A model generated the notes under the pieces. That model worked only from the letters and a program-made list of their open reading frames with translations. It did no database searches and had not been told where the DNA came from. A stretch of 64,000 bases of DNA from the NCBI GenBank assembly GCA_053919585.1, contig CM132814.1; one strand, 5' to 3'. The position numbers and the translations under genes were made by a program. The stretch is from Euprymna scolopes. Its lineage: Eukaryota. Below are positions 1,716 through 63,307 of this stretch, piece by piece (within the stretch, counting starts at the first letter, position 1; each line of letters starts with the position of its first letter).

Positions 1716-2440
1716 AGTATTTATTTGCCTTCTCACCAGAGCAAAATGTGAGACGAGGTCGTTTTTAATGTGGGTTTATTTCAGCTCTCTAAAAAAAAGG
1801 GAAAAGCGCAGTCCGGTTTGGACAAAAACTAATAATTGTCCTAGTGTAGAGGGTTCCCCTCTGATGACCGCGACAAATTACCCTTACGTACAGAACAGAT
1901 ACTTTGCTTTTATCCCGACCAGAAGGCCAAGAACAACAGGGTATTTATTTGCTCCCCCATCGAGCAAATTAGGCACAAGGCCGATTTTTAATGTGAGGAG
2001 TGAGGGGGAATGGGGACAACTCTCCGGGGAGTAGGGGAGCTGGATAGTTACAATTAGTATGAAGGGTTTCCCTTACATTGATCAAGGTCTTATATGTGGG
2101 GTCGCCCCAACATATGATCTTTGCTTGCAGTATCTGTCGGAACAGATACTACACTTTGATCTCAGCCCGAATGCCAAGAACAACAGGGTATTTATTTGCA
2201 ACCCCACTGAGCAAATTAGGCGCAAGGCCGTTTTCTAATGTTGAGAGTAAAGTGGAAATGTTACCAACTCCCCGGGGAGTAGGGGATCTGGAGAGTGACA
2301 ATTGATATGAAGGGTTTCCCATACATTGATCAATAACTTATATGTGGGGTTGCCCCCACATATGGTCTTTACTCGCAGTATCTGAGGTAAAAGATACTGC
2401 ACTTTGATTTCGTCCCGAGGGCCAGTACAACAGTTTATTT
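1716..2440. repeat. Diverged tandem repeat, about 247-bp period; related copies at about 6820-7190
   Basis: The motif gccaagaacaacagggtatttattt recurs at 1926 and 2173 with a variant at 2421. Segment 1716-1915 aligns by eye with 6893-7100. Confidence 0.75.
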
Positions 2441-3299
2441 AGTGTTTGACCCCGGCCCTTGCATTATCTACTGCCAGAACCTCATTGGGGGTTCAAAGCA
2501 CTTAGGCATAAAGCCGGTAGGGTCAATGGGGGTCGAGGGTCATTCTAACTATGATCTAAGTCTTTGAGTAGACTTTATTAAGTTCCCTACACTAAGACAT
2601 TATCAGCATAATACCTCTTTTTACCATGGAGTTTATCTACTTGAAATCTCCCCAGCGCATGAGTCGGCTTTATATACAATCTGAAAACATGAATATTTAC
2701 ATGTTAACAAAACCAAAATTATATATACAAACACAAATGATTTTTTTAAAATAAATGAGAGATGAGATGATGGGGAGCGGGCAAACTAAGATACACCCAA
2801 AAATAAAGAAAAATAAAACAACTAAACAAAATGCCTATGGAGGCGGGCTAGTAAGGGTCCTCCCAACCTACTTCTGAATATGGAGCGACCACTGTCTTCC
2901 GGTCCCGAAGGTTGAAAGCAAGTAAGTCGATCCCTAGTTGGAAGTGAGGAACCTAGGTACGATATTTCGAATTTAAATTAGGTAAAGTTGTGTGATGTTG
3001 GGAATGGATAGCGTTTTCCAATACAAATGTAAGTGTAGTAGCAACAGACCGGGGACAAACAAAGACTGGATTGCGCATCTGTGAAAGCTCCTTTAGTGGC
3101 GATGAAAAATAAAATCGGGGACTGGATCAACTATCGTCTTTGCCCTAGTCTAGCACCTAATAAACTTATTTCCACTCGACGTTGTTACAACCTATATAAC
3201 CCCACGCTAAAATAATTTGCTCGGGGCTGGGTTCCGTAGGACCTTTAGCACCACCTGACCAATACTTCTAGGGTGGGAAAACAAACTCAAACCTGCCGC

Positions 3300-9352: not shown

Positions 9353-9745
9353 GTTCATTTGCATTTAACAATATTGAGGTTCATTTTGATTAAAAATATT
9401 TATTTTGATTTAAAACAATATTGTTCATTTTTATTAAAAATAATCATTTTGATTTAAAAAAACATATTGTTCATTTTCATTAATAAATATTCATTTTGAT
9501 TTTAAAAAAATATTGTTCATTTTGATTAAAAAATATTCATTTAGATTTAAAAAAAATCATTTTGATTAAAAACAAAAGTCATTTTGATTTAAAAAATACT
9601 GTGCATTTTGGTTTAAAAATATGATTCATTTTGATTTAAAAATATAGTTCATTTTGATTTAAAACTATTGTTCATTTTGATTTAAAAATATTGTTCATTT
9701 TGATTTAAAAATATTGTTCATTTTGATTAAAAAATAGTTTAATTT
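9353..9745. repeat. AT-rich minisatellite, unit about 20-25 bp (ttcattttgatttaaaaatattg)
   Basis: About 15 or more visible imperfect copies. Confidence 0.9.
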
Positions 9746-12460: not shown

Positions 12461-14132
12461 GTATCAGAACAGTAAAAAAAAAAAAAAAACAATTTAAATG
12501 TGTTAGTATGTCTCTTTACTGATGAAGGCGAAATCCACAATGTTTAATTTTTAATCGGTCCTAAGGTCTAAACCATGGTGAAAAAAAAAACAAATTGACT
12601 TCGTACGGAATAAAACAAATATAGATTTAAACCAAAACATTCTTATTATTGCTGGCGTATTGATTAAAATCAATTAGTGATTAAATTAAGACACTAATAT
12701 TATAAAGACGATGAAAAAATAACATATTTCCATTGAATAAACATAAGCAAAATATCATTTTTCAGTCGAATTTGTCATTCAGCTAAAAAATTAATACATG
12801 TTCGTATGTTAGTTTGTGGCCATCACATAACTTTGCCAAATGTCATAGAACTCAATATAAATATCGGTTATTTTCTAACTTGAAACATTCGTTTTATTTT
12901 ATGATGTCTAGCAGGAAAATCAAGATAAAGGTCACCACAGAAATCCAGCTATTTGCCATTACTTCAGATCCTTTATTCGGGTACCAGTGCCTTCGTCCAT
13001 ATTGTAATAATTTGATCAAAGTTCATTAACAATTCTAAAAAATGTTCTCGTCTTCAGAATATCCTGGTGAACTCTCGAAACTTATTAAACCTTTCCGGGC
13101 TTTTTTCGTATTGACACTTTTATTGATAGAAGACACATGAAACTCTACTCCTTTCGAAGTAATCTTTCGGGCTACATGCATATTTTGTGCCGGCCCGAGC
13201 CACTCTGGAAGNNNNNNNNNNNNNNNNNNNNNNNNNNNNNNNNNNNNNNNNNNNNNNNNNNNNNNNNNNNNNNNNNNNNNNNNNNNNNNNNNNNNNNNNN
13301 NNNNNNNNNNNNNNNNNNNNNNNNNNNNNNNNNNNNNNNNNNNNNNNNNNNNNNNNNNNNNNNNNNNNNNNNNNNNNNNNNNNNNNNNNNNNNNNNNNNN
13401 NNNNNNNNNNNNNNNNNNNNNNNNNNNNNNNNNNNNNNNNNNNNNNNNNNNGTTAAGAAGTAAAAAGTCGAAAATTGTTACTCGGGATATTTGGATGTTT
13501 AGCTGTCTTTCAACTGTTTCAGGCTGTGCACATGCGAATAATTCATATGGCAGCTTTCCAAAGTGTGAAAAAGTATGGTCTAGAAAAATTATATATAGAT
13601 CGTGACAAGCTGGTCTAATAGTTATCGTATTAATTCACTTTCTTTATATTTGTTTGTGATGTCAACCTGAGTATGCTTCTTTTATTTACAAGAAGTGAGC
13701 TCTTTAGAAAAAAATCACACTCGAATGCACATGTCTCAGATTCTTTCATTTTTATTTTTCTAAATCAGTTTACNNNNNNNNNNNNNNNNNNNNNNNNNNN
13801 NNNNNNNNNNNNNNNNNNNNNNNNNNNNNNNNNNNNNNNNNNNNNNNNNNNNNNNNNNNNNNNNNNNNNNNNNNNNNNNNNNNNNNNNNNNNNNNNNNNN
13901 NNNNNNNNNNNNNNNNNNNNNNNNNNNNNNNNNNNNNNNNNNNNNNNNNNNNNNNNNNNNNNNNNNNNNNNNNNNNNNNNNNNNNNNNNNNNNNNNNNNN
14001 NNNNNNNNNNNNNNNNNNNNNNNNNNNNNNNNNNNNNNNNNNNNNNNNNNNNNNNNNNNNNNNNNNNNNNNNNNNNNNNNNNNNNNNNNNNNNNNNNNNN
14101 NNNNNNNNNNNNNNNNNNNNNNNNNNNNNNNN

Positions 14133-14170
14133 TGTGAAACAACGAAACAGGTCTGTATGTCGATGACTAA
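14133..14170 (+). ncRNA. Type I hammerhead ribozyme, 3' half (5' half in the gap)
   Basis: Identical to the 3' half of the complete copies downstream. Confidence 0.7.
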
Positions 14171-14354
14171 AATATATTTTATAAAGCTCCCCTCTTCGGT
14201 AGAGCACTCTCGTAAATTATCTTACTCGCTACTTAATTTAGCTGAAATAATGCGAAGCTCGCAATTTGTTTACAAACAAAACGTTTGAGCCCTCTACGAG
14301 TGGCGGACGGATGTTTATTTTAATACGCATTCGGACAGTTTAATTTCGGTCACC

Positions 14355-14426
14355 GATTCCGTAGTCAGGGGGTAGGACTGCCGACTGTCATCACGACGGT
14401 TCTAGGTTCGATCCTCGGCTTGGGAG
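14355..14426 (+). promoter_or_regulatory. tRNA-Asp/Glu-derived SINE-like head with Pol III A and B boxes (copy 1)
   Basis: A-box-like TAGTCAGGGGG at 14362-14372, AGGACT, CT-GTC-A anticodon-loop remnant, B box GGTTCGATCC at 14405-14414 and a 3' GGGAG. The acceptor and anticodon stems do not pair, so it is not a functional tRNA. Confidence 0.75.
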
Positions 14427-14431
14427 AGGTG

Positions 14432-14492
14432 TTAGTCTAGCGGCACTGATGAGTTGTGAAACAACGAAACAGGTCTGTATGTCGATGACTAA
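14432..14492 (+). ncRNA. Type I hammerhead ribozyme (copy 1)
   Basis: CTGATGA at 14446-14452; stem II GTTG/CAAC with loop TGAAA; GAAA at 14466-14469; stem III ACAG-GT-CTGT; GTA cleavage triplet (cut after 14479); stem I CGGCA/TGTCG plus distal TTAGTC/GACTAA around an internal loop. Confidence 0.93.
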
Positions 14493-14676
14493 AATATATT
14501 TTATAAAGCTCCCCTCTTCGGTAGAGCACTCTCGTAAATTATCTTACTCGCTACTTAATTTAGCTGAAATAATGCGAAGCTCGCAATTTGTTTACAAACA
14601 AAACGTTTGAGCCCTCTACGAGTGGCGGACGGATGTTTATTTAAATACGCATTCGGACAGTTTAATTTCGGTCACC

Positions 14677-14748
14677 GATTCCGTAGTCAGGGGGTAGGAC
14701 TGCCGACTGTCATCACGACGGTTCTAGGTTCGATCCTCGGCTTGGGAG
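14677..14748 (+). promoter_or_regulatory. tRNA-derived Pol III head (copy 2)
   Basis: Same sequence as copy 1, offset +322. Confidence 0.75.
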
Positions 14749-14753
14749 AGGTG

Positions 14754-14814
14754 TTAGTCTAGCGGCACTGATGAGTTGTGAAACAACGAAACAGGTCTGT
14801 ATGTCGATGACTAA
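14754..14814 (+). ncRNA. Type I hammerhead ribozyme (copy 2)
   Basis: Identical to copy 1, offset +322. Confidence 0.93.
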
Positions 14815-14998
14815 AATATATTTTATAAAGCTCCCCTCTTCGGTAGAGCACTCTCGTAAATTATCTTACTCGCTACTTAATTTAGCTGAAATAATGCGAA
14901 GCTCGCAATTTGTTTACAAACAAAACGTTTGAGCCCTCTACGAGTGGCGGACGGATGTTTATTTAAATACGCATTCGGACAGTTTAATTTCGGTCACC

Positions 14999-15070
14999 GA
15001 TTCCGTAGTCAGGGGGTAGGACTGCCGACTGTCATCACGACGGTTCTAGGTTCGATCCTCGGCTTGGGAG
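14999..15070 (+). promoter_or_regulatory. tRNA-derived Pol III head (copy 3)
   Basis: Same sequence as copy 1, offset +644. Confidence 0.75.
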
Positions 15071-15075
15071 AGGTG

Positions 15076-15136
15076 TTAGTCTAGCGGCACTGATGAGTTG
15101 TGAAACAACGAAACAGGTCTGTATGTCGATGACTAA
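15076..15136 (+). ncRNA. Type I hammerhead ribozyme (copy 3)
   Basis: Identical to copy 1, offset +644. Confidence 0.93.
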
Positions 15137-15320
15137 AATATATTTTATAAAGCTCCCCTCTTCGGTAGAGCACTCTCGTAAATTATCTTACTCGCTACTT
15201 AATTTAGCTGAAATAATGCGAAGCTCGCAATTTGTTTACAAACAAAACGTTTGAGCCCTCTACGAGTGGCGGACGGATGTTTATTTAAATACGCATTCGG
15301 ACAGTTTAATTTCGGTCACC

Positions 15321-15392
15321 GATTCCGTAGTCAGGGGGTAGGACTGCCGACTGTCATCACGACGGTTCTAGGTTCGATCCTCGGCTTGGGAG
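15321..15392 (+). promoter_or_regulatory. tRNA-derived Pol III head (copy 4)
   Basis: Same sequence as copy 1, offset +966. Confidence 0.75.
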
Positions 15393-15397
15393 AGGTG

Positions 15398-15458
15398 TTA
15401 GTCTAGCGGCATTGATGAGTTGTGAAACAACGAAACAGGTCTGTATGTCGATGACTAA
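15398..15458 (+). ncRNA. Type I hammerhead ribozyme (copy 4, C3U core variant)
   Basis: As copy 1, but the core reads TTGATGA (C>T at 15412). Confidence 0.85.
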
Positions 15459-15460
15459 AA

Positions 15461-15500
<40 letters not shown>

Positions 15501-16458: not shown

Positions 16459-16519
<61 letters not shown>

Positions 16520-16529
16520 CATATATATC

Positions 16530-16910
16530 TGGAATATTTTATGTATATGCATGTTTTTATTTGTTTATGTTCTATTATTATTGTTAGTTTTTAAATTATT
16601 TGTATCTTAATCCTAGAGTTAGTTTTATGCTGTGAACACAGTTATTTGCGATTTCTTTCCTACAGTTTAGTACATGATGTGGTTCTTTAAAGTATAGGAT
16701 AGCAAATGTTTCATGAAGGAATAATCTACATTGATCGTCTAGGTCTCTCTACATGTGTTTGCTTGTCTTACAATTGTCAATTCGACTACCGGCGAACTTC
16801 CGCTTACCTTCAGTTACCAGTATTTCTTCGCTATAGTTGGGTTTATATGATGTTTATAATAATAAATAAATAAATAAATGAACAGGTATATACATACACT
16901 ATCACCCACA
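16530..16910. repeat. About 380-bp direct repeat, copy 1 (copy 2 at 19559-19935)
   Basis: tggaatattttatgtatatg...tatacatacac is present twice with scattered substitutions, and each copy is preceded by (TA)n. Confidence 0.9.
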
Positions 16911-19179
16911 TATGATGGACTCTCCGTCGATTTTCGACGTTTGAGACTCCGACAATTAGCCTGAAGGTCTAGAACTCAGGGTGTCGACAATCACTTTGAC
17001 GTATGTGGTACTTTAGTCCTGCTAGAGACTTGCAATTGCGTCCGCAGTGGTGACAGACATATAAATGCGAGAATTTAGCTCCACACTGCTCAGTATTATT
17101 TTTTGACTTGACTCTCGCTTCTTTTAGTTTTTCGATGCCAAACGCCTTGATTTTTCTGTCACACATTTCTATCCGCTCCTTTCTGTCTTTTGCAGTTAGC
17201 TCAATGTTGTTGTATTCAACATTTAGAAGCTGTAAATTAGACTTTATTTTGTCTTTGTAACGCAACCATGGTCGTCCCACGTTTCGACGGCCTCTCTCTA
17301 ATTGGCCATACAGGAGTTGCTTCGGTATCCTATCATCATCCATTCGCATCACATGACCCGCCCATGGAAGCTGCGACTGGATTAAGAAGCTTTCGATGTT
17401 GCTGATTTTACAAAGTGTGAATAATTTCGCATTTGATATTTTGTCTTTCAAAGTAAAACCGAAAATGGCACGTAGACATATCTTATGGAAGATGTCAAGT
17501 TGCGAAATTTGTTTTCGGTACGGGGTCCACGTCTCCGAGGCATACAAAAGTGTGGACATTACCACAGCATTATATACATGAATTTTTGTCTTTAGGCTTA
17601 AACCCCGAACATTCCATAATCTTGTGTGCAGCTTGCCAAAGGCGCTGCTTGCTCGGGAGATACTGTTGATAACCTCATGGTCAAGAGATGCACTTGAATC
17701 AACCACACTTCCCAAGTATGTAAACTTGTTAACATACTTCAGGTTTTTCCCATCTACCTGAATCGACATCTGAGGAAAATTGTGCACGGTTTGTTTCTGT
17801 TTAACACCCTCTACTTGTTTCGGTGTAGATGGTGGCTGTTAGATGATTCCGTTTTCTTATACTGATTGTCAAGCCAAAGGCTGTACATACAGTAGAAAAC
17901 CGATTTACAAGATGTTGAGCCTCCTCCCGAAAAGTCGCGACAAGGGCAGCATCATCTGCAAACAGAAAATCTCTTATAATGGTTCTTCGGAGAAGTGTTT
18001 TCGCTTTGAAGCGTTGTTGATTAAAAATCCCACCATCTGTACGTAATTGGAAATAAACGCCAGTGTCAACATCTGCAAATGCATATTTCAGCATAACAGA
18101 GAAGTAAAGCGCGAATAGTACTGGAGCCATTACACAACCTTGTTTTGTTCCATTGGTCACATTGAAAGGCTCAGAAGAGTCCCCATTGGACATCACTGAA
18201 ACCTTCATGCCATCATGGAAGGATGTTATTACTTTTACCATATTGTCAGGTATACCAATTTTCTTAAGGATTTTCCATAGGGCAGTTCGGTTGACAGTGT
18301 CAAAGGCTTTAGTAAGATCAATGAACACTATGTATAGCTCTTGGTTCTTTTCTCGAACTTTCTCAGAGACCTGTCGCAGAGAAAAGATCATATCTATTGT
18401 ACCCCGGAGAGAGCGGAAATCACACTGCGATTCGGGATATATCTCATCTACAAGATATCTGATTAATCTGTTGATTATTAGTCTGGCCATGATTTTTCCA
18501 GCAATTGAGAGCAGAGATATGCCACGATGATTCTAACAGGAATTCCTCAAGCCTTTATTTTTATAAAGATGGTGAATTGATGCATTTTTAAAGTACTGTG
18601 GGACTTTTCAAGATGTCCAAATGGACAGGAAAAGTGCATGTAGCCTTCTGGCCAGGTTATGGCCACCATATCTGTAGACTTCCGGTGGTATACCGTCATT
18701 TCCTGGTGCTTTACCCAATGATGTGTGTTCCACTGCTGCAAGGACTTCTGGGAGAGTTGGTAACACGGATAGTTCTGATCTCTCGGGGACCTGCTCAATT
18801 GAGTTTATGATCTCATCGTCTGTTACCGAAGAAGAATTTAACACTGTTTCAAAATGTTCCTTCCAGCGTCTCAAGATACCGTCCTTGTCTGTCAGTAATG
18901 CCCCGTCTTCAGCTCAAATTGGCGAAACTCCTGATTCTTACGGCCGAAAACCTTCCTTATACCTTCATAAAAGGCTTTTGTGTCCTTTCTGTTGAATGCT
19001 GACTGAACAGCTTCTGCGTGTGCGGTCCACCATTTCTCTTTCATCTGTCGTAGTGTCCTCTGCCCTTTCCCTTTGCAGGTTTTGTATGCCAATCTTTTTT
19101 CAGTAGAGTTTTGGTCGTCAATCCATGCTTTATGAATTTGATGCATTTTCTGAATTTGATCCTGGGCTTCTATATCCTG
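16905..19179 (-). mobile_element. RTE-clade (BovB/RTE-1-like) LINE, 5' end lost in or near the gap, frameshifted
   Basis: RT motifs PESQCDFR...FIDLTKAFDTV...GTKQGCVMAP...FLFADD at 17801-18490. FTYLGS, WAGHVMRMDDDRIPKQLLYGQL...GRPWLRYKD and a C-terminal CHHC...H zinc finger at 16969-17787. GKAPGNDGIPPE upstream. Confidence 0.93.
17801..18490 (-). pseudogene. Reverse transcriptase domain of the RTE LINE (disrupted ORF)
   Basis: Canonical non-LTR RT motifs. The reading frame is broken from the flanking ORF segments by frameshifts and stops. Confidence 0.9.
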
Positions 19180-19494
19180 NNNNNNNNNNNNNNNNNNNNN
19201 NNNNNNNNNNNNNNNNNNNNNNNNNNNNNNNNNNNNNNNNNNNNNNNNNNNNNNNNNNNNNNNNNNNNNNNNNNNNNNNNNNNNNNNNNNNNNNNNNNNN
19301 NNNNNNNNNNNNNNNNNNACATCGAAGCCCACAAGAGCCATGACAGTCAAAGAACCGGAAGTCCAAGACTCGAGTTTCGCCCTCATTTTGCGATATTGGT
19401 TGGCTGTGGAATTTATTATATACAATCTCTCACATTCTGAAAATAATTTTGCGATGTTGTTTGGCTGTGGAATTTATTATATACAATCTCTCAA

Positions 19495-19558
<64 letters not shown>

Positions 19559-19559
<1 letters not shown>

Positions 19560-19923
19560 GGAATATTTTATGTATATGTATGTTTTTATTTGTTTATTTT
19601 CTATTATTTATGTTAGTTTTAAAATTATTTGTATCTTAAACCATAGAGTTTGTTTTATGTTGTGAACACAGTTATTTGCGATTTCTCTCCTACAGTTTAG
19701 TACATGATGTGGTTCTTTAAGGTATAGGATAGCAAATGTTTCATGAAGGCATAATCTACATGGATCGCCTAGGTCTCTACATGTGTTGGGTTTGTCTTAC
19801 TGTTGTCAATTCGACTACCGTCGAACTTCCGCTTACCTTCAATTCCCAGTATTTCTTCGCTATAGCTGTGTTTATACAATGTTTATAATAATAAATACAT
19901 AAACATGTATATACATACACCAT

Positions 19924-19935
<12 letters not shown>
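19559..19935. repeat. About 380-bp direct repeat, copy 2
   Basis: See 16530-16910. Confidence 0.9.
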
Positions 19936-41641: not shown

Positions 41642-44600
41642 TGTTTTAAAGAGCATGTAAGAGTATCTTGTGTAGTTTCCGACGTGTAGGAGACGGGGAG
41701 TCTCGTCGTGGGCGACGAAGCGTTTCACTGAAGTACCAACAAACAATGACAGCCACGGCGCGAAGGTAATTAACAAAGCTCAGCTGACTGCACGAATAGA
41801 AACGGAACCCAACGGTCACTGTACTGATCGCCACGAACGTCAGAACCCGACTGACTCGCACCTCCAACGGACCGATTTTTATTCCTCAAGATGGCCTAGC
41901 TAATTTGCATCCCCGCGAGATCTCGCGCGATCCTGCGAGATTCCGTCTCTAATAAAAGCAGGCAGGCGCCATCTTGGAACTCTTTCTTCCGCTGCCCCGA
42001 CCACAGGATCAGCCACCACCCCGCACGCCAGGCACACACGGACCCTCTTGCGCCGAGGGCTACGGTTAGTCTCACACTCCCCCCTGGTCTCCAGATTACA
42101 TACGTGACACGGCGGACGTGGCCGTTTGATTCGAGCACTCCTGCAGAGGGGTATTGCCGGGACTTCCTCATCGGAGCTTTCAGAAGTGGCATCGGAAGCA
42201 TCAGCTTCAGCATTAGAGCCCGCAGTTGAGTCATTAGGTTCGTGGGGCACAGGTTGAATCCATCGCACGTCGTCGGATGACTCGCTCCTTCCACTGCTCG
42301 CAGTTGAGTCACCAGGTTCGTGGGGCACGGGTTGGATCCATCGCTCATCGTCGGATGACTCGCTACTTCCACTGCTCGCCGATTGGTCAGCGCTTAGAGC
42401 GGGCCGGACATCCCTTACGTGGCGCGGAGTATCATCGACTAGTATGGCCTGTTCACTGATGACGCCGGTGACCCGCCCCCTCCAAAAGCTGTTGGTGCAC
42501 CGGCCGCCGGGTGGCTTCACCCAGACGGTGTCTCCCACTTGGTACGTCCCCTGGGGTTCTCGTTGGTCGGGTAGACACACTTCAACGCCCTTGACGTGCA
42601 CGTGGTAGTGATGAATCGCATCAGCGGGCGCACTGCCGCCAGTCACGGCGTCCTTAGGCGTTGTGTTGTATCTGTAAACCGCCTCCGCGATCGTACACTT
42701 CTTCCTGGCCGCGATCCTCTTCACGGTTCAGTGGCACCGCTCCGCTACGCCGTTGCCGCTCGGCACATACGCGCATCGGTGTCGAACGCGGATCCCCCAG
42801 TTGTCCATAAAATGCCTGAATTCCCTGCTGCAGAACGCCGTGTCGTTATCCGTGAGGATCTCCTCAGGAAGCCCCCTTTCGTAGAATATGGATTCCAATT
42901 CGTGGATGGCACTGGTGGAATCCTGCCTCGCTAATTGGCGCCAAATGGCGAACCTCGTTGGCCCACAGTCTATCAGCGTGAGGAAGTGTTAGCTGCCGTA
43001 GTGGGTTATATCCATACCCAACCGACTCCAGGTCGCGTCCACTCCCAGCTGTCCTTTCCGCCATCTGGCTTGGGCGGGGTCGATGGACTGGCACGTTTGG
43101 CACTCCCTGACCACTGCTCTTACTGCGCTTTTTGGTATTTATGGTCTAGCCAACTTCACAAAGCAGTTGTCCCGATGTACTCCAGAGTGCCCACTGTCGT
43201 GATGTATCTTCCTGATTTCGTCCTCCTCGACGGAGGCAGCACACAGAGGCAATGGCTTAGCTTCTTTCTTCATAGCCTCATACCATCTCCGTAGTACCCG
43301 AGTGAGCTTGTCGGCGAGGTTGTAGTCCGAGGTGACGAGCACTACGTCTACGGACAGGTTGTACTCCGTCACCAGTTTTTTTACAGTCTCCAGCCTCCGT
43401 CTTATCAGCATTTCGCTGGCTGCCTTTGTGCGTGCCCTGGCCTTGCTCGTGAGTGTGTCCGACACCCAGTGGTGCACGCAAAGTGAGTCAGTGTGAACAC
43501 GCAGTTTCTTCACTTCCCATTGAAGTGCCAGGTTAATGCCCTTTATTACAGCGTCGAGTTCTGCCAGGTTGATATGGGCAGCATCATTTGCCGGTCGCAG
43601 CCAGCAGCCATCCTCAACTACGGCCCCATCTTTCTCCAAAACTACACCGATCGCTAGAGAACTTGCGTCCACCCACACGCTCAGTTCGTCTCCCTGCACG
43701 CACCAGTCCCCTGTGGCGGGGGCATTCTTTATCACACTAGCGACGGTCTCCTTTAACATTCGAACCAATAGTTCGTCGGTTATCTCATCGTCCCAGCCTT
43801 TGGTGACCGCATTTGCCCTCCTTTTTTATGACGCCTGTCGCCGCACGAACCCATCCGCATACTGGAAGGTGCCCCACAAGTTTCCCGCACATGGAGAACA
43901 CGGCACGTCTTGTGTAAACGTCGGGTACGTCGGGAACTGCGGTTCCACGCCTCCACTTCAGGATCCCTCGCTCCTCTTGAACGCTCAAGCCCAATACGCG
44001 GGCGCCATCCTCAAGCCGCTCAGAGTCCTTGCAGTTTAGACCAAACTCGGCAAGTTTGGATCTTACGCGCGAAGATGACACGATATCTTCGTTCACGTAT
44101 ATATCGTCAATGTACTCCGATGTTCCCTTTCTGATCCATTCTTCTTGTGACAACACGGCATTGACGATAGCCTTCATTATCTGGGGTGCTACGTTTAGCC
44201 CAAATCCGAGTCGCGTAAGACAGTATCTCTTCCCGGAAAACATCACTGTCTGGAAAGGTCACATCGCCTCGCCGATCCGGACCTGCAAGTATGCTTTTCT
44301 CAAGTCCAGTAGGGACACATTAGACCCCTGCCGGCGCCACTCTCGCAGTTTGCTGGCACAGACGTCGGCGTCCGCTGTGAACGCATCAACGTGCGCATTC
44401 AACTCGCGGTAGTCCATTACCGGCCTCACCTTTGACTTGTTAGGTTGGGCAACTGCCATCAGTGGTATCAGGCCCTTGGGGGTCCACGTTTGTCGTAGGG
44501 GTATGGAATCAGCCAACCGTTCTTAATCCATTCACGGAGCTAGCTTTCGTATGCAGGCCTTATCTGGTCGGGCATACGGTACTCTGCCACTTTGTTTTGT

Positions 44601-45085
44601 AGTTTGGCCGGTTCCTTGTCTTCTGACCACGTCCAAGTGGCGGTCCACGCCTTCTGTTGGTCGTCGAACTCCGCACTGAAGTCCGGCTGGTCGGCGCTTA
44701 GTGCTGCGCACACCGGGGGCATATCCTGAAACTCTACAACGCCAGCGCGCGTTATGCGTACGCCGTCCAGGGCTTTGATGGCATCGTAGCCTAGCAACAG
44801 GTCGAAACTCAGCGGCTTTTCGCGTGTCACCGGCGCTTCGACGTTGGCCGAGTTTCCAGTTTTTGTGCGAATGTGTACCACACCCACGCCGCAACACATT
44901 CGTATTTTTCCAGTAATGGTAGTTATCCTGACGTTCTTCTTTTTCCACGCCCGACAGAAGTCCGCACACACTATGGTGCGGGAGCAACCGGAATCAAGGA
45001 GGGCTGAACATAACGTGTCATTAATTCGGACCTGAATGACAGGGAGCTCCTTGTTTATTTTCTGTTCGGGAAAGGCACACAATAT
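41642..45085 (-). mobile_element. GC-rich LTR retrotransposon (PR-RT-RH-INT order, Gypsy-like), lacking gag and 5' LTR
   Basis: Protease ALLDSGCS (44540-45082); RT LDLRKAYLQV, RLGFGLNVAP, YIDDIYV; RNase H WVDASS...INLAELDA...HTDS...NLADKLTR; integrase with TDND core. PPT aggggggag, then an LTR starting TG at 42076. Few frameshifts. Confidence 0.9.
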
Positions 45086-45248
45086 ATTCAGCGGATAAAC
45101 ACGCCAGAGTCAAAACAATGAACGAATATACTAATGTCACAGCCGGGCATATCACTAAACGCAGCTGTTCTGTTAAGTATCTCCCTCTTTCTCTTTCTTT
45201 CCCACCTGTCTCTCAATGGCAAAATATGAATTGTAAATACTGTCAAGA

Positions 45249-48200
45249 GTGCGACGTTTTCTAGTAGACAGAAGTTTAAAGAACTGATTCGTTCAACTCT
45301 GATAAGAATTTCTAGCGCGTATATCGCTTAACACAAATTATTCAGCTTTCTCCTCCCTCGTGCTGCGGCAAGCTATCCCGGATATTTGATCCAAAACTTA
45401 TACCTATATTTGATGGCAGTGAATCTGGACAGTCAGTAGTGGAGTGGTTGGAGAACACTGAAGTAATATGTCAGCAAAGTAGCGTAAAGCGCATTGAATG
45501 TGTAATTCCCATGCGTTTGTTAAGCGGCGCATATGCAGTGTACCAGCAATTAAGTGAGGAAAAACGAGTCGATTTTGGGTGTATACAGGATACGCTGTAC
45601 ACAGGGTTTGCTTTGGATCCGTTTGCTGCACGGAAGCAGTTCGCAGCTCGTCGTCTCAAACCAGGTGAAACAATCGACGTATTTTTGTCGGAACTGCGCA
45701 GGCTAGCAGTCCTGTTTGTCGGCGTATCTAATCAATGCCTGCAATGTGCATTCATTCCTGGTTTGCTAGAACATGCGGAAAACTTGTTGCGGGCATCATC
45801 CCAGATAGATAACTTGGATCTATCTCATGCGCTGGTGCGGGATCGTGCAATTTTTCTGACTAACTCGATAGTTCCAGAGCAAGCTGCCTTAGATGTACGA
45901 TCGACACCAGTTTACCCCAAGGAGACATATAATTCACGGATGTGTTACAAGTGTAATCGACTGAATCATAGGGCAAACAATTTCCTGTTGGATAGTGTAA
46001 CAGGAGGAGATGTCGGGGTAAGACATCGGGACCCAATCACGTGTTATCAATGTCGGCGGCGAGGGCACATTGCTCGATGTTGTCCGGGACACGAGCAAAG
46101 GGGCGAGAAGTGAGCGCCAATCCCCCAAACTGGTGTAAATGGCGCCTTACAAATTGTCACGGTTCTCATCAATGCACTAACACGCACAGCTCTCGTGGGT
46201 ACCGGATGCACACAGTCACTGGTCCGCAAGTCATGTTACAAGTATTGGACGAGGAAAATAACGCCAATGCTCACAGCAGATGGAAGCACACTAAGATAAT
46301 GGGGAGTAGGAATGGTGCATGGTGACTTTGGTTCAACACGGAACATTAGCATATAAGTCCTAATCGTGGATGGATACTTACTGGGATTTGATTTATTGTT
46401 TGGACTGGACGCAATCCAGCGACTGGGAGGAGTAGCTGTGTCTAGCACAGGAAAGGTGACCATTCCACATTTTATCAAGGTCAATTGTGCTGCTATCACT
46501 ATTACCGAACATGACTTCTCTGCCAAATATGACCAAGATACTCAGATGTGGACTACATCGTGAAAGTAGGCTGGCAACCAACCTCCACTTTCATTGAGAA
46601 ATAGCACTGTAGAGAAACCAGCGCCAACAGCGATTCCCGATGAATACGATCGGGAATTGCAGGTGTGGATTGATAATAGTTGGTTACTGCCATATCCCGA
46701 GGACGATCTTGGCTCTCCAAAAGGTATAATACGTCTCATGGTTCTTGTGCAGGAGAATAAACAGAATGTGTGTTCCGTTATGTATTATCGTTAGCTAAAT
46801 GAGTGCGTCGATGTGCATTCGGTCAACGCGGATGTTTGATTACAAAAATTGAGGAAATGGAGAGAACAGGGACCAAACGTGGCAGTGCGGGACCTACGCT
46901 GAACCTATTTGCAAGCACCTGTTTACAAATCTCTGTTGCCGTTTCAAACAGTAACAATTGAGTAAGGGAATGCGACATTGTATTACCCGCCTCGGATTCG
47001 GGCTTAACGTTGCGCCTCTAATAATGCGAGTCATTGTTAATACCTTCCTCATTTAGGATAAGAATATAAATGAGGCTACGTCCTCATATATTGATAACGT
47101 TTTTGGGAATGAAAGAATATGTTCGGCAACCCATAAAAGAAACATTTGGAAAAGTTTGGCCCGGAAAGCAAGACCCCAGAACAGTGGTAGCGACAGGATT
47201 CGGCTAGTGTCATTAAGGATTTGCAGAGTATAGTCTGCGAAAGGTGGCCGCCGACCGAATTACTCACAGATAATGGTGCAGCATTTTCCGGAAAGACAAT
47301 TGCTGATTTTACACAAATGTGGGGCGTGCACATTCGATTCCGGTGTGCCAACGAACCCTCCGACACGGTATAATGGAGCGATCCCATCGCACTATAAAGC
47401 GCATTGCGGCAAGACCATGGTGCACGATCTTGGAGGCAGTGAACTGGTACAACGTCACGCCTAATAACACCTGCGAATATGCGATACAATTATAGGATCC
47501 GTATCAAAGGTATTGATGAAGTGAGGCTGCCCGAGACCGCAGTGGCTAATCCATAAAAGGAAGGGGATGCGGTTTGGGTGAAGAATCCCCGTGAAAGATG
47601 CACAACTCAGTTCGGTACAGGAACAGTGGCAAAAATAAACTGTCAACACTCAATATAAGTTGCTGGAAAACAACACCACATAAAAGCTGTGCGCCAAACA
47701 TGGCGACATGATGTTATAATCAATGATCAAATCAATTCATCATATGACTAAGACCCACTGCTCTACGAATGGCCAGATGACGGAAGCTCTTCACAAGATG
47801 ATGAGTATCAAGAGCAGGAGGAGTTTAATGATCCGGCAAACGAAGGCACCACTGAGGAAGTTCCTGGATCTGTACCATTAAGGCGAAGTACCCGGACGAA
47901 ACGGCCTGCCCAGCATTGTTACATATGTGATCTCGAGATCAGGGTGGAGTGTTACGAGCATGCGCAAAAACGCACAAAATATATGTTGTGCGAGCCTGCG
48001 TCGTGGAGCGAACCTGCGACCGTTAGATTACAAAAAATACGTTTGTGAGTGATACTCGCATTTCCACAACAATTGGGTTCGCCCGATGGCTAAAAAATGT
48101 CAAGCCGAAACAAAACTTTCGAGTCATTTCTTTTTTTGGTCGGTCGACGGTTGAAAAGAACTTGCTTGTGAAGCGTGCGGCGTTTTCGAGAAGACAGAAA

Positions 48201-62380: not shown

Positions 62381-62459
62381 AATACATAAAAAAGTGTATG
62401 CACTTTTGGAATATGACTATACAAATATACAAACATATATAATATATTAAATATAAAAT

Positions 62460-63233
62460 TATAAGTTATTAGTGCAGGAGTGACTCCAATACATACAAAT
62501 ATATGAGTATATATGTATACTAACCATTCATAATGTTCGGTTTATTAGTTTTGGTGTGAATCCATATAAATATATAAGCATATAAACAATTATAATGCAC
62601 AATGATCGATTAATTATTCTAGGAGTGAATCACATTCATGCACATATCTACACATAAACACATCATTAAACTTCATAATGATCGCTTATTTAGTTTAGGA
62701 GTGGATCCAATACACACAAATATACAATCATATACAAAAAAGATAAAATTAATAATGATCGGTTGATTAGTTTAGGAGTGATTCTAATACATAGAAATAT
62801 ATAAGCACATACGTATAATTAAAAGTCATAATGATCGGTTAATTAGTTTAGGAGTGAATCCAATAATACAAATATGTAACTATATACACATAATTAAAAT
62901 TCATGAATATCGGTAAATTATTTTAAGAGTGGATCCAATATAAACGTATACACATAATTACAATTAATAATGATCGGTTAATTCCTTAAGTGGTGATTTT
63001 AATACATAAGATATATAAATATATACACATAATTAAAAAAATCAAAATGATCGGTTAATTAGTTTAGGAGTGAACCAATACATAAAAATATATACATATA
63101 TGCACAAAATTAAAATTCATAATGATCGTTTAATTAGTTTATGGATGATTCCAATACACACAAATATATAAACATATACACATGATTGAATGTAATAAGG
63201 ATCGGTTAATTTGGTTAGAGGTGATTTCAACAC

Positions 63234-63307
<74 letters not shown>

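What the first reader, a model, noticed from the sequence alone, without database searches (positions are those of the whole stretch)
14133..15470. Tandem 322-bp array in which every unit is a tRNA-derived Pol III head fused to a complete type I hammerhead ribozyme
Seen: four units plus a partial unit at an exact 322-bp period, nearly identical. Each has CUGAUGA, a 4-bp stem II, GAAA, stem III, a GUA cleavage triplet and a two-part stem I with an internal loop placed to contact loop II (UGAAA). A tRNA-Asp/Glu-like A/B-box head ends only about 5 nt upstream of the ribozyme. Known: tandem type I hammerhead repeats (Schistosoma SM-alpha, newt satellite 2, Dolichopoda pDo500, metazoan non-LTR retrozymes) yield monomer RNAs by self-cleavage, and some form circular RNAs. 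Inference: this is a young, non-coding, self-cleaving mobile RNA family that would release 322-nt monomers or circles and be copied back as multimers by a host-genome RT. Whether this family is already described cannot be judged without a search.
Basis: partly seen in the sequence, partly recalled or inferred. Interest (0 to 1): 0.93.

Follow-up and report, generated by a model that had tools for sequence, protein, structure and literature searches.

The report
tRNA-headed hammerhead retrozyme array
This is a young copy of a mobile, non-coding repeat in which a tRNA-derived promoter-like head sits next to a self-cleaving hammerhead RNA motif. It has copied itself through RNA into at least 1,800 (TA)n microsatellites of this genome. 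That design was known from blood flukes, and it is shown here for a second, unrelated host.

Summary
Window 14133-15470 holds 4.2 units of exactly 322 bp, and each full unit differs from the reference unit by at most one base. Each unit has a complete hammerhead core, a 4-bp stem II, a two-part stem I and a GUA cleavage triplet. A 70-nt tRNA-Asp(GTC)-like segment ends 4 nt before stem I.

The family is dispersed and very young. The exact 43-nt ribozyme occurs 4,405 times in the genome. The exact 3' terminus followed by (TA)n occurs 1,807 times. Arrays are 5'-truncated at variable points but always end at a 14-nt TA palindrome inside a (TA)n microsatellite, which points to target-primed reverse transcription.

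No array ends at the cleavage site. Array starts, however, are enriched about 5-7-fold exactly at that site. This is an indirect footprint of cleavage in vivo, and it implies circular or uncleaved multimeric templates.

Stem III is too weak to form in a monomer but gives a 10-bp helix between two copies, so the ribozyme probably acts as a dimer. Rfam's Hammerhead_1 threshold is not reached.

A second, unrelated 410-bp family in the same genome has the same layout with a different tRNA-like head.

Verdict: a non-LTR retrozyme of the Schistosoma SMalpha type. It is a new member of a known kind. Cleavage, circles, Pol III transcription and the partner reverse transcriptase remain unproven.

The parts
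14133..15470 (+). Tandem array of 322-bp units: 4 full units plus a 50-nt partial unit. The 5' edge is hidden by the masked stretch 13774-14132.
   Evidence: TRF gives period 322, 4.2 copies, 99% matches.
14358..14427 (+). tRNA-Asp(GTC)-like head of unit 1, repeated at 14680-14749, 15002-15071 and 15324-15393. It has an A-box-like TAGTCAGGGGG at 14362-14372, a B box GGTTCGATCCT at 14405-14415 and an anticodon-loop-like CTGTCAT.
   Evidence: Collinear alignment with this genome's ARAGORN-verified tRNA-Asp(GTC): 45 of 71 positions identical, score 32 against shuffles 14.6 +/- 2.5, 0 of 1000 reaching it. Not recognised by ARAGORN or by the Rfam tRNA model.
14432..14492 (+). Type I hammerhead 1, with predicted cleavage between 14479 and 14480. 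Identical copies lie at 14754-14814 (cleavage after 14801) and 15076-15136 (cleavage after 15123).
   Evidence: Core and stems read directly from the sequence. The imposed hammerhead fold has -9.8 kcal/mol. The exact 43-mer occurs 4,405 times in the genome. Rfam gives only Hammerhead_3 at 18.6 bits, E 0.87.
15398..15458 (+). Fourth hammerhead, with the core mutation C3>U at 15412 (UUGAUGA). It is probably inactive.
   Evidence: The role of the C3-G8 pair comes from established hammerhead biochemistry; the U3-A8 covariant is described in PMC4209133.
14490..14503 (+). 14-nt perfect palindrome TAAAATATATTTTA, which contains the unit's only T4 run. It recurs at 14168-14181, 14812-14825, 15134-15147 and 15456-15469. 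The last copy is the 3' terminus of the array.
   Evidence: the repeat finder pairs I23-I25. All 16 sampled arrays end here. This terminus followed by (TA)n occurs 1,807 times genome-wide.
14480..14801 (+). Predicted 322-nt monomer RNA, from cleavage site to cleavage site. The second monomer is 14802-15123. GC is 44%, and the head plus ribozyme lie at its 3' end.
   Evidence: Inferred from the cleavage sites. Fold energy is -94.5 kcal/mol as a linear molecule and -88.5 as a circle; z = -2.1 against shuffles.
15471..15498 (.). (TA)n microsatellite joined to the array's 3' end; this is the insertion target.
   Evidence: TRF reports 15460-15498 with period 2. The 3' flank is (TA)n in all 15 other sampled arrays, and about 12 of those 15 also have TA repeats on the 5' flank.

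Best explanation
The array is one recent insertion of a non-autonomous, RNA-mediated mobile element. It is a non-LTR retrozyme of the Schistosoma SMalpha design.

Each 322-bp unit carries a degenerate tRNA-Asp-derived head, with A-box-like and B-box elements and therefore probably an internal Pol III promoter. A type I hammerhead follows 4 nt downstream.

Inferred life cycle:
- Transcription from a head runs into the next unit.
- Hammerheads of neighbouring units pair through their self-complementary stem III, forming a double hammerhead, and cut after GUA. This releases 322-nt monomers whose promoter lies at their 3' end.
- Monomers are probably circularised by a host RNA ligase.
- A reverse transcriptase nicks a (TA)n microsatellite. 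The DNA end anneals to the TA palindrome 11-24 nt downstream of the cleavage site.
- cDNA synthesis then runs around a circle, or along an uncleaved multimer, for a variable distance. This yields arrays with a fixed 3' end, a variable 5' end and 1 to about 19 units.

The partner enzyme is not identified. A Penelope-like element is favoured from the literature.

Shown here: the anatomy, copy number, youth, (TA)n targeting, fixed 3' end, variable 5' ends, and the bias of 5' ends to the cleavage site.

Inferred: Pol III use, cleavage, circles, and the partner.
For: Anatomy.

tRNA-Asp origin of the head: the alignment beats 1000 of 1000 shuffles. The D arm, T arm, 5-nt variable loop and 7-nt anticodon loop are kept, read directly from the sequence.

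Dispersal and youth: at least 189 BLAST matches at 96-100% identity on many chromosomes. The ribozyme 43-mer occurs 4,405 times. The 3' terminus followed by (TA)n occurs 1,807 times, 916 on the + strand and 891 on the - strand. Forty sampled units are nearly all identical to the consensus.

Retroposition signature: every sampled array ends at unit position 45-51 (numbered from 14455 = 1) and starts at scattered positions.

Target: the 3' flank is (TA)n in all 15 other sampled arrays, and about 12 of those 15 also have TA repeats on the 5' flank.

Template form: no array ends at the cleavage site followed by (TA)n, against 1,807 that end at the palindrome. A doubly cleaved linear monomer therefore cannot be the template.

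Cleavage footprint: 11 of 42 distinct 5' junctions near the site are exactly (TA)n|UGUCG, and 5 more are within 1-2 nt. Genome-wide there are about 114 such loci in the 13-nt window. Two control windows of the same size, both with TA or TAT microhomology, hold 42 and 19 loci, with 4-6 in their best class. The control anchors are about as frequent as the test anchor: 3,873 against 4,405.

Dimer: stem III does not form in a monomer (0.0 kcal/mol) but gives a 10-bp intermolecular helix of -11.4 kcal/mol. This matches the short helix III with a palindromic loop described for metazoan type I hammerheads (PMC4209133).

Expression: contigs of four RNA-labelled runs cover the unit at very high summed word depth. 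The frequent variants inside the ribozyme fall only in loop II, loop III and the end of stem I.

Recurrent design: an unrelated 410-bp family has a tRNA-like head (Rfam tRNA 27.1 bits, E 0.002) 10 nt before a Hammerhead_1 match of 53 bits, and also ends at (TA)n.

Precedents: SMalpha (PMC6765202, PMC2770079); non-LTR retrozymes (PMC7229834); the link to Penelope-like elements and their (TA)n bias (PMC8557442, bioRxiv 10.64898/2026.07.22.740005).
Against: There is no Rfam hit at the gathering threshold. The best hit in the hammerhead clan is Hammerhead_3 at 18.6 bits, E 0.87.

The minimum-free-energy fold of the 61-81 nt ribozyme region is not the hammerhead fold: -14.8 against -9.8 kcal/mol, with z = -0.5.

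ARAGORN and the Rfam tRNA model do not recognise the head. Its acceptor and anticodon stems are broken.

The RNA evidence comes from assembled contigs only. It gives no read ends and no strand, DNA carry-over is not excluded, and circles cannot be told apart from tandem transcripts.

The family is too young for covariation.

The excess of 5' ends at the cleavage site could partly reflect the 3-nt TAT microhomology with (TA)n.

No 5' ends pile up at the expected Pol III start, around unit position 205-218.

The unit's T4 run lies between the ribozyme and the rest of the unit, so Pol III would have to read through it.

Some arrays (L027, L028) carry variants in only a subset of units. A single round-the-circle copy does not predict that.

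No Penelope-like ORF was found in the window or in flanking loci.
Confidence: 0.72

Rival explanations
1. It is a classical tRNA-derived SINE moved by a LINE. Pol III transcripts start at a head, read through weak T4 terminators to give linear multimers, and a LINE enzyme with a preference for TA-rich tails copies them. The hammerhead only trims transcripts or is a passenger, and no circles are involved.
For: The head is tRNA-like. The array's 3' end coincides with the unit's only T4 run, as expected for a Pol III terminator. 5' truncation is typical of LINE-type reverse transcription. Some arrays have variants in only some units, which fits a heterogeneous multimeric template. A LINE-type RT lies 1.5 kb away.
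Against: The 3' junction varies within the palindrome: it can end at ...ATATAT...TATTATATA or ...TTTTATA. That fits annealing registers better than a fixed RNA end. No 5' ends cluster at the expected Pol III start. Arrays of up to about 19 units would need about 19 read-throughs. The nearby LINE does not end in (TA)n; the apparent shared end is a local 440-bp duplication found only twice in the genome. The 5'-end bias to the cleavage site shows that the ribozyme acts on templates.
Confidence: 0.13
2. It spreads at the DNA level. A rolling-circle (Helitron-like) or extrachromosomal circular DNA copy of the unit integrates into (TA)n by recombination at the TA palindrome. The tRNA and hammerhead motifs are cargo.
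For: About a quarter of the listed arrays both start and end within the TA palindrome, so they hold a whole number of units (many starts at unit position 36-40). Helitrons insert at A|T dinucleotides and can form tandem arrays; this rests on general knowledge, and the preprint 10.64898/2026.07.22.740005 notes a Helitron-like distribution of retrozymes.
Against: Most 5' ends are scattered, which a site-specific nickase does not predict. There are no Helitron termini (5'-TC ... CTRR-3'). The 5' ends are enriched at an RNA cleavage site. The sequence is abundant in RNA-labelled runs.
Confidence: 0.06
3. It is an inert satellite. Local tandem duplication of a sequence happens to contain relic tRNA and hammerhead motifs, with no present RNA-level activity.
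For: Rfam and ARAGORN do not call either motif. The last ribozyme in this array is mutated. Unit-subset variants suggest some unequal exchange after insertion.
Against: There are 4,405 identical ribozymes and 1,807 independent termini on all large contigs and both strands. Sequence identity is near-perfect. Variants in RNA contigs avoid the ribozyme core and stems.
Confidence: 0.03

Closest known systems
Schistosoma SMalpha / Sjalpha SINE-like elements (Ferbeyre et al. 1998; Laha et al. 2000; summarised in PMC6765202; tRNA-Gln-TTG-like head per PMC2770079)
   Same: Both have units of about 330 bp that are tandem as well as dispersed. Both place a tRNA-derived Pol III promoter directly before a type I hammerhead, so that after cleavage the promoter sits at the 3' end of the monomer and at least two units are needed to propagate. 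Both have a weak helix III.
   Different: The host phylum differs. The head comes from tRNA-Asp, and from a different tRNA in the sibling family, rather than tRNA-Gln. The strict (TA)n target and the fixed TA-palindrome terminus are documented here, and I found no such report for SMalpha. Unlike the sibling 410-bp family, this ribozyme scores below Rfam RF00163.
Metazoan non-LTR retrozymes (Cervera and de la Pena 2020, PMC7229834; review PMC7761336)
   Same: Both are tandem 170-400 bp non-coding repeats with one type I hammerhead per unit and GC below 50%. Both are dispersed and highly represented in RNA data. Target-site duplications are unclear in both. Where helix III is weak, the ribozyme works as a dimer.
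   Different: Those papers report no tRNA-derived head and no conserved motif pointing to the integration machinery (PMC7761336). Here a tRNA-like head, a fixed TA-palindrome 3' end and a (TA)n target are evident. Circular RNA is shown for those retrozymes but not here.
Penelope-like elements and their pLTR hammerheads (PMC4209133, PMC8557442)
   Same: Both have a type I hammerhead with a short palindromic helix III. Both give tandem, 5'-truncated insertions. A microsatellite bias including (TA)n is reported for Naiad and hypothesised for Neptune. An inverted plus tandem arrangement is seen for the sibling family (C3:89840417-89842627; window 19319-19496).
   Different: There is no RT or GIY-YIG ORF here. 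No such partner was found here. Naiads are reported to lack hammerheads and to be long inactive in cephalopods (PMC8557442).
Newt satellite 2 and cave-cricket pDo500 hammerhead satellites
   Same: All are tandem repeats of about 330 bp transcribed into self-cleaving multimers. The ribozyme is active only as a dimer because helix III is weak (Forster et al. 1988, cited in PMC4209133).
   Different: The newt transcripts appear to be made by Pol II (PMC6765202). No tRNA head and no microsatellite targeting have been described for them.

Membership tests
Hammerhead ribozyme, type I | Conserved core C3 U4 G5 A6 N7 G8 A9 ... G12 A13 A14 ... A15.1-U16.1, with H17 not G | tested here: met
   CUGAUGA at 14446-14452, GAAA at 14466-14469, A14469-U14478 and A14479. 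The core is intact in 3 of the 4 visible copies; the fourth has C3>U.
Hammerhead ribozyme, type I | Three helices around the core, with helix I open and helices II and III closed | tested here: inconclusive
   Stem I (5 + 6 bp) and stem II (4 bp) pair as required. Stem III is 3-4 bp with a 2-4 nt loop and does not form alone (0.0 kcal/mol), but it forms a 10-bp helix between two copies (-11.4). The hammerhead fold is -9.8 against an MFE of -14.8 kcal/mol.
Hammerhead ribozyme, type I | Reaches the gathering score of Rfam RF00163 (34 bits) | tested here: not met
   There is no hit at gathering. At E<=10 the only clan member kept is Hammerhead_3 at 18.6 bits. As a positive control, the sibling family scores 53.1 bits.
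Hammerhead ribozyme, type I | Mg2+-dependent self-cleavage 3' of H17 | not testable with these tools
   Only an indirect footprint is available. Array 5' ends are enriched at exactly this bond: 11-16 of 42 junctions, against 4-6 in the best classes of the controls.
Non-LTR retrozyme | Short (170-400 bp) non-coding tandem repeats, each with a type I hammerhead, dispersed in the genome, GC below 50% | tested here: met
   Period 322, no ORF of 150 aa or more, GC 44%, at least 1,807 loci.
Non-LTR retrozyme | Expressed as abundant monomeric circular RNA | tested here: inconclusive
   The unit is covered at very high summed word depth in 4 RNA-labelled runs. These are assembled contigs without ends or strand, and a circle cannot be told apart from a tandem transcript.
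SMalpha-type SINE-like element | tRNA-derived head with A and B boxes directly upstream of the hammerhead | tested here: met
   A 71-column collinear alignment with the genome's tRNA-Asp(GTC), 63% identity, beaten by 0 of 1000 shuffles. The B box GGTTCGATCCT matches 10 of 11 consensus positions and the A box 8 of 11. The gap to stem I is 4 nt.
SMalpha-type SINE-like element | Transcription by RNA polymerase III | not testable with these tools
   Inferred from the boxes only.
SMalpha-type SINE-like element | Sequence homology to SMalpha | not tested
tRNA gene | Cloverleaf recognised by ARAGORN or by Rfam RF00005 | tested here: not met
   ARAGORN finds none. RF00005 gives no hit even at E<=10 on 106 nt. 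The acceptor and anticodon stems are broken.
Element mobilised by a Penelope-like element | An autonomous RT/GIY-YIG partner that shares the hammerhead or terminus | tested here: inconclusive
   None was found among ORFs of the window or flanking loci. The insertion style, tandem, 5'-truncated and biased to (TA)n, matches descriptions in PMC8557442.

The most novel reading that the evidence does not exclude
This genome, which is probably a decapodiform cephalopod (a group said to have almost no SINEs), may host a superfamily of Pol III-driven circular-RNA retrozymes. In it, different tRNA heads (one Asp-like, one resembling tRNA-Ala) were recruited independently next to a type I hammerhead. 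The elements integrate specifically into (TA)n by priming on a TA palindrome of a circular RNA. On this reading, the genomic junctions themselves record rolling-circle reverse transcription and in vivo ribozyme cleavage: zero 3' ends but a marked excess of 5' ends at the scissile bond.
Probability: 0.3. Interest if true: 0.7.

Novelty: new member of a known kind. Interest (0 to 1): 0.55.

Why it matters
How animal retrozymes are transcribed and re-inserted is still open. The 2020 review states that their repeats show no motif pointing to the integration machinery (PMC7761336).

This family is young and uniform enough that its junctions can be read directly. They show a fixed TA-palindrome 3' end, a strict (TA)n target, no 3' ends at the ribozyme site and an excess of 5' ends there. 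That gives testable constraints on the template (circular or uncleaved multimer) and on priming (microhomology with the target).

It also shows that the tRNA promoter plus hammerhead design of schistosome SMalpha is not a flatworm oddity. It recurs, twice and independently, in another phylum.

Finally, thousands of such units probably sit among the "unclassified" repeats of genomes reported to lack SINEs (PMC13218726).

Tried and rejected
Rfam at gathering on the whole window gave nothing. At the E-value threshold it gave only weak Hammerhead_3 and RAGATH-1 hits.

ARAGORN on the window found no tRNA. Rfam on the head alone gave no tRNA hit.

Read laying could only use assembled contigs, so it gave no molecule ends, no strand and no test for circles.

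I looked for the partner enzyme among ORFs of the window and of flanking loci. I found a LINE-type RT, a Tc1/mariner transposase fragment and a Gypsy-like element, but no Penelope-like ORF.

I considered the neighbouring LINE (16969-18490, - strand) as the partner because its downstream side seemed to end at (TA)n. This was rejected. The shared sequence is a local 440-bp direct repeat (16469-16910 and 19498-19931, 90% identical), and its 20-mer occurs only twice in the genome.

Covariation in older subfamilies and a full 5'-end spectrum could therefore not be computed.

Covariation between the two families was not scored, because my motif scan required pairing and the result would be circular.

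Ferbeyre 1998 is not held.

Disclosure: a script that printed array flanks included locus L003, which is the window's own place in the genome. It thereby displayed 70 letters overlapping the masked stretch 13774-14132. This was unintended. I excluded loci L001-L004 from later scripts, have not repeated those letters, and base no claim on them.
Full report
WHAT IS THERE

Tandem Repeats Finder reports a 322-bp period from 14133 to 15471, with 4.2 copies, 99% matches and no indels. Units 2 and 3 are identical. Unit 1 differs from them at one base and unit 4 at one base. The array starts directly at a masked stretch (13774-14132), so its 5' edge cannot be read. It ends at 15470 in a (TA)n microsatellite. 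There is no ORF of 150 aa or more in the array.

THE HAMMERHEAD

Each unit has the full hammerhead core:
- CUGAUGA at 14446-14452.
- Stem II GUUG/CAAC with loop UGAAA.
- GAAA at 14466-14469.
- A15.1-U16.1.
- A at position 17 (14479), so cleavage would follow the GUA at 14479.
- Stem I of 5 bp, an internal loop (UAG/AU) and 6 more bp.

Three qualifications apply. First, Rfam does not call it. There is nothing at gathering, and at E<=10 the only clan member kept is Hammerhead_3 at 18.6 bits. The same tool gives 53 bits for Hammerhead_1 on a sibling family, so the method works. Second, the hammerhead fold is not the minimum-energy fold of the isolated region: -9.8 against -14.8 kcal/mol. Third, stem III (ACAGGUCUGU) is too weak to form within one molecule (0.0 kcal/mol). 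It is self-complementary, however, and forms a 10-bp helix with two central G.U pairs between two copies (-11.4 kcal/mol). This is the short helix III with a palindromic loop that the literature describes for metazoan type I hammerheads acting as dimers in tandem transcripts (PMC4209133, PMC7229834).

The fourth ribozyme of this array has C3>U (15412) and is probably dead.

THE tRNA-LIKE HEAD

ARAGORN and the Rfam tRNA model do not recognise the head. I pulled this genome's own tRNA-Asp(GTC) genes, verified with ARAGORN, and aligned them. The head (14358-14427 and its repeats) aligns collinearly over 71 columns at 63% identity. The score is 32 against 14.6 +/- 2.5 for shuffles, and none of 1000 shuffles reaches it. 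tRNA-Thr, Lys, Cys, Gln and Ser score lower. tRNA-Glu was not in the panel.

Read against tRNA numbering, the following are kept: the D arm, the T arm with B box GGTTCGATCCT, a 5-nt variable loop and a 7-nt anticodon loop CTGTCAT. The acceptor and anticodon stems are broken. The head ends 4 nt before stem I.

THE FAMILY IN THE GENOME

The genome has 5.9 Gb in 925 contigs, with at least 46 large ones. This is compatible with a decapodiform cephalopod (haploid number about 46, PMC13218726), but that is my inference only.

- The unit has at least 189 BLAST matches at 96-100% identity on many contigs.
- The exact 43-nt ribozyme occurs 4,405 times, with reversed control 0.
- A 34-mer from the body occurs 3,873 times.
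- The exact 3' terminus followed by (TA)n occurs 1,807 times, equally on both strands.

There are therefore at least 1,800 separate insertions, with about 2.4 ribozymes each. Forty full units from 16 arrays are almost all identical to the consensus, so the burst is very recent. The window's array carries two variants shared by all four units and absent from the other 36 units. This shows that its units descend from one variant template or were homogenised.

HOW IT INSERTS

All sampled arrays end at the same place, a perfect 14-nt palindrome TAAAATATATTTTA that lies 11-24 nt downstream of the cleavage site. The register varies slightly. The end is followed by (TA)n. The 5' ends are scattered over the unit. 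About 12 of the 15 other sampled arrays also have TA repeats on the 5' flank, so (TA)n is the target rather than a tail. A fixed 3' end with variable 5' truncation is the signature of target-primed reverse transcription.

Exact-pattern counts sharpen this picture.
- No array ends at the ribozyme cleavage site followed by (TA)n, against 1,807 that end at the palindrome.
- Among junctions where (TA)n lies within 12 nt upstream of unit positions 16-28 (numbered from 14455 = 1), 11 of the 42 distinct loci listed are exactly (TA)n|UGUCG, which is a 5' end at the scissile bond. Five more are within 1-2 nt. About 114 such loci exist genome-wide.
- Two control windows of equal size, both containing TA or TAT microhomology, hold 42 and 19 loci, with 4-6 in their best class.

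The simplest reading is as follows. cDNA synthesis is primed where the nicked (TA)n anneals to the palindrome, on an RNA in which the upstream ribozyme site is intact. That RNA is either a circle or an uncleaved multimer. A fraction of the templates have a 5' end made by the ribozyme, where the enzyme runs off. This is indirect evidence for cleavage in vivo. The 3-nt TAT microhomology at that site is a partial confounder.

EXPRESSION

Contigs of four RNA-labelled runs of one organism cover the whole unit at very high summed word depth. Coverage is highest over the 3' half of the head and the ribozyme. The frequent variants inside the ribozyme fall only in loop II (14460), loop III (14474) and the outer end of stem I (14432).

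Because only contigs were available, there are no molecule ends and no strand. DNA carry-over is not excluded, and circles cannot be separated from tandem transcripts.

A SECOND FAMILY

The best Hammerhead_1 matches in the genome belong to an unrelated 410-bp tandem family. BLAST finds no similarity to the 322-bp unit beyond the core. In that family a tRNA-like head (Rfam tRNA 27.1 bits, E 0.002; it resembles tRNA-Ala(TGC) from memory, untested) lies 10 nt before a hammerhead with a fully palindromic helix III (ACUCGAGU). Its copies also end in a TA-rich terminus at (TA)n. The design is therefore recurrent in this genome.

That family also shows head-to-head inverted plus tandem arrangements (C3:89840417-89842627; window 19319-19496). 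This is a style described for insertions of Penelope-like elements (PMC8557442).

COMPARISON WITH WHAT IS KNOWN

The closest known system is Schistosoma SMalpha/Sjalpha. These are units of about 335 bp, tandem and dispersed, with a Pol III promoter followed by a type I hammerhead. After cleavage the promoter lies at the 3' end of the monomer, so at least two units are needed (PMC6765202). Their head is tRNA-Gln-like (PMC2770079).

The broader class is the metazoan non-LTR retrozyme (PMC7229834), now argued to derive from Penelope-like elements (bioRxiv 10.64898/2026.07.22.740005). Microsatellite and (TA)n insertion bias is reported for some Penelope-like clades (PMC8557442).

I found no held paper that describes tRNA-headed hammerhead repeats in cephalopods. 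One squid genome paper lists 235 Hammerhead_1 hits without comment (PMC6962438). A cuttlefish paper reports almost no SINEs (PMC13218726).

I could not find the partner enzyme. The neighbouring LINE is not it.

VERDICT

The element is a new member of a known kind, an SMalpha-like non-LTR retrozyme. It comes with unusually clear insertion signatures.

Self-cleavage, circular RNA, Pol III transcription and the identity of the reverse transcriptase remain to be shown.

Noticed in passing
L031-L040 (e.g. L037:1026-1134); genome C8:10432194-10435515: An unrelated tandem family of about 410 bp. A tRNA-like head (Rfam tRNA 27.1 bits, E 0.002) lies 10 nt before a canonical Hammerhead_1 (53-57 bits) with palindromic helix III ACUCGAGU. 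Copies end in a TA-rich terminus at (TA)n.
   Followed up: partly
window 19319-19496: Fragments of that 410-bp family in a complex arrangement. One piece lies on the - strand (unit positions 12-80, including the 3' half of the hammerhead). It is followed by two short + strand repeats of the 3' terminal region, next to (AT)n at 19498-19559 and a masked stretch at 19180-19318.
   Followed up: partly
genome C3:89840417-89842627: Two units of the 410-bp family on the - strand are followed by four on the + strand. This is a head-to-head inverted plus tandem arrangement, as described for insertions of Penelope-like elements.
   Followed up: no
window 16969-18490 (- strand): A 5'-truncated LINE-type retrotransposon. 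It has an RVT_1 domain (E 5e-25, FADD motif) and a C-terminal part with a C2H2-like zinc finger. Homologues are unnamed RT-containing proteins from diverse invertebrates.
   Followed up: partly
window 16469-16910 and 19498-19931: A 440-bp direct repeat at 90% identity, each copy beginning with (TA)n. The two copies bracket the LINE and the 410-bp-family fragments. A 20-mer from it occurs only at these two places in the genome.
   Followed up: partly
window 41900-46113: A Gypsy-like LTR retroelement remnant. ORFs match aspartyl protease, RNase H/RVT_3, DUF7047 and a CCHC zinc knuckle.
   Followed up: no
window 15412: C3>U in the catalytic core of the last complete hammerhead of the array. The 3'-terminal ribozyme of this locus is therefore probably inactive.
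   Followed up: partly
genome C11:1.68-2.16 Mb; C19:127.55-127.58 Mb; C14:19.09-19.37 Mb: Very large tRNA gene clusters. There are hundreds of tRNA-Thr(TGT/AGT) and tRNA-Lys genes every 144-290 bp on C11, and tRNA-Asp(GTC) genes at a spacing of about 335 bp on C19. The Asp anticodon-arm 22-mer matches 718 times at up to 2 mismatches.
   Followed up: no
window 1893-2441, 9379-9736, 62421-63253: Other tandem repeats in the window, with periods of 248, 23/46 and 76/153 bp. There are also about 17 (AT)n microsatellites, so (TA)n targets are plentiful in this genome.
   Followed up: no
L020:172-1032 (- strand): A Tc1/mariner-type transposase fragment (HTH_Tnp_Tc3_2, E 1e-19) beside one of the 322-bp arrays.
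   Followed up: no
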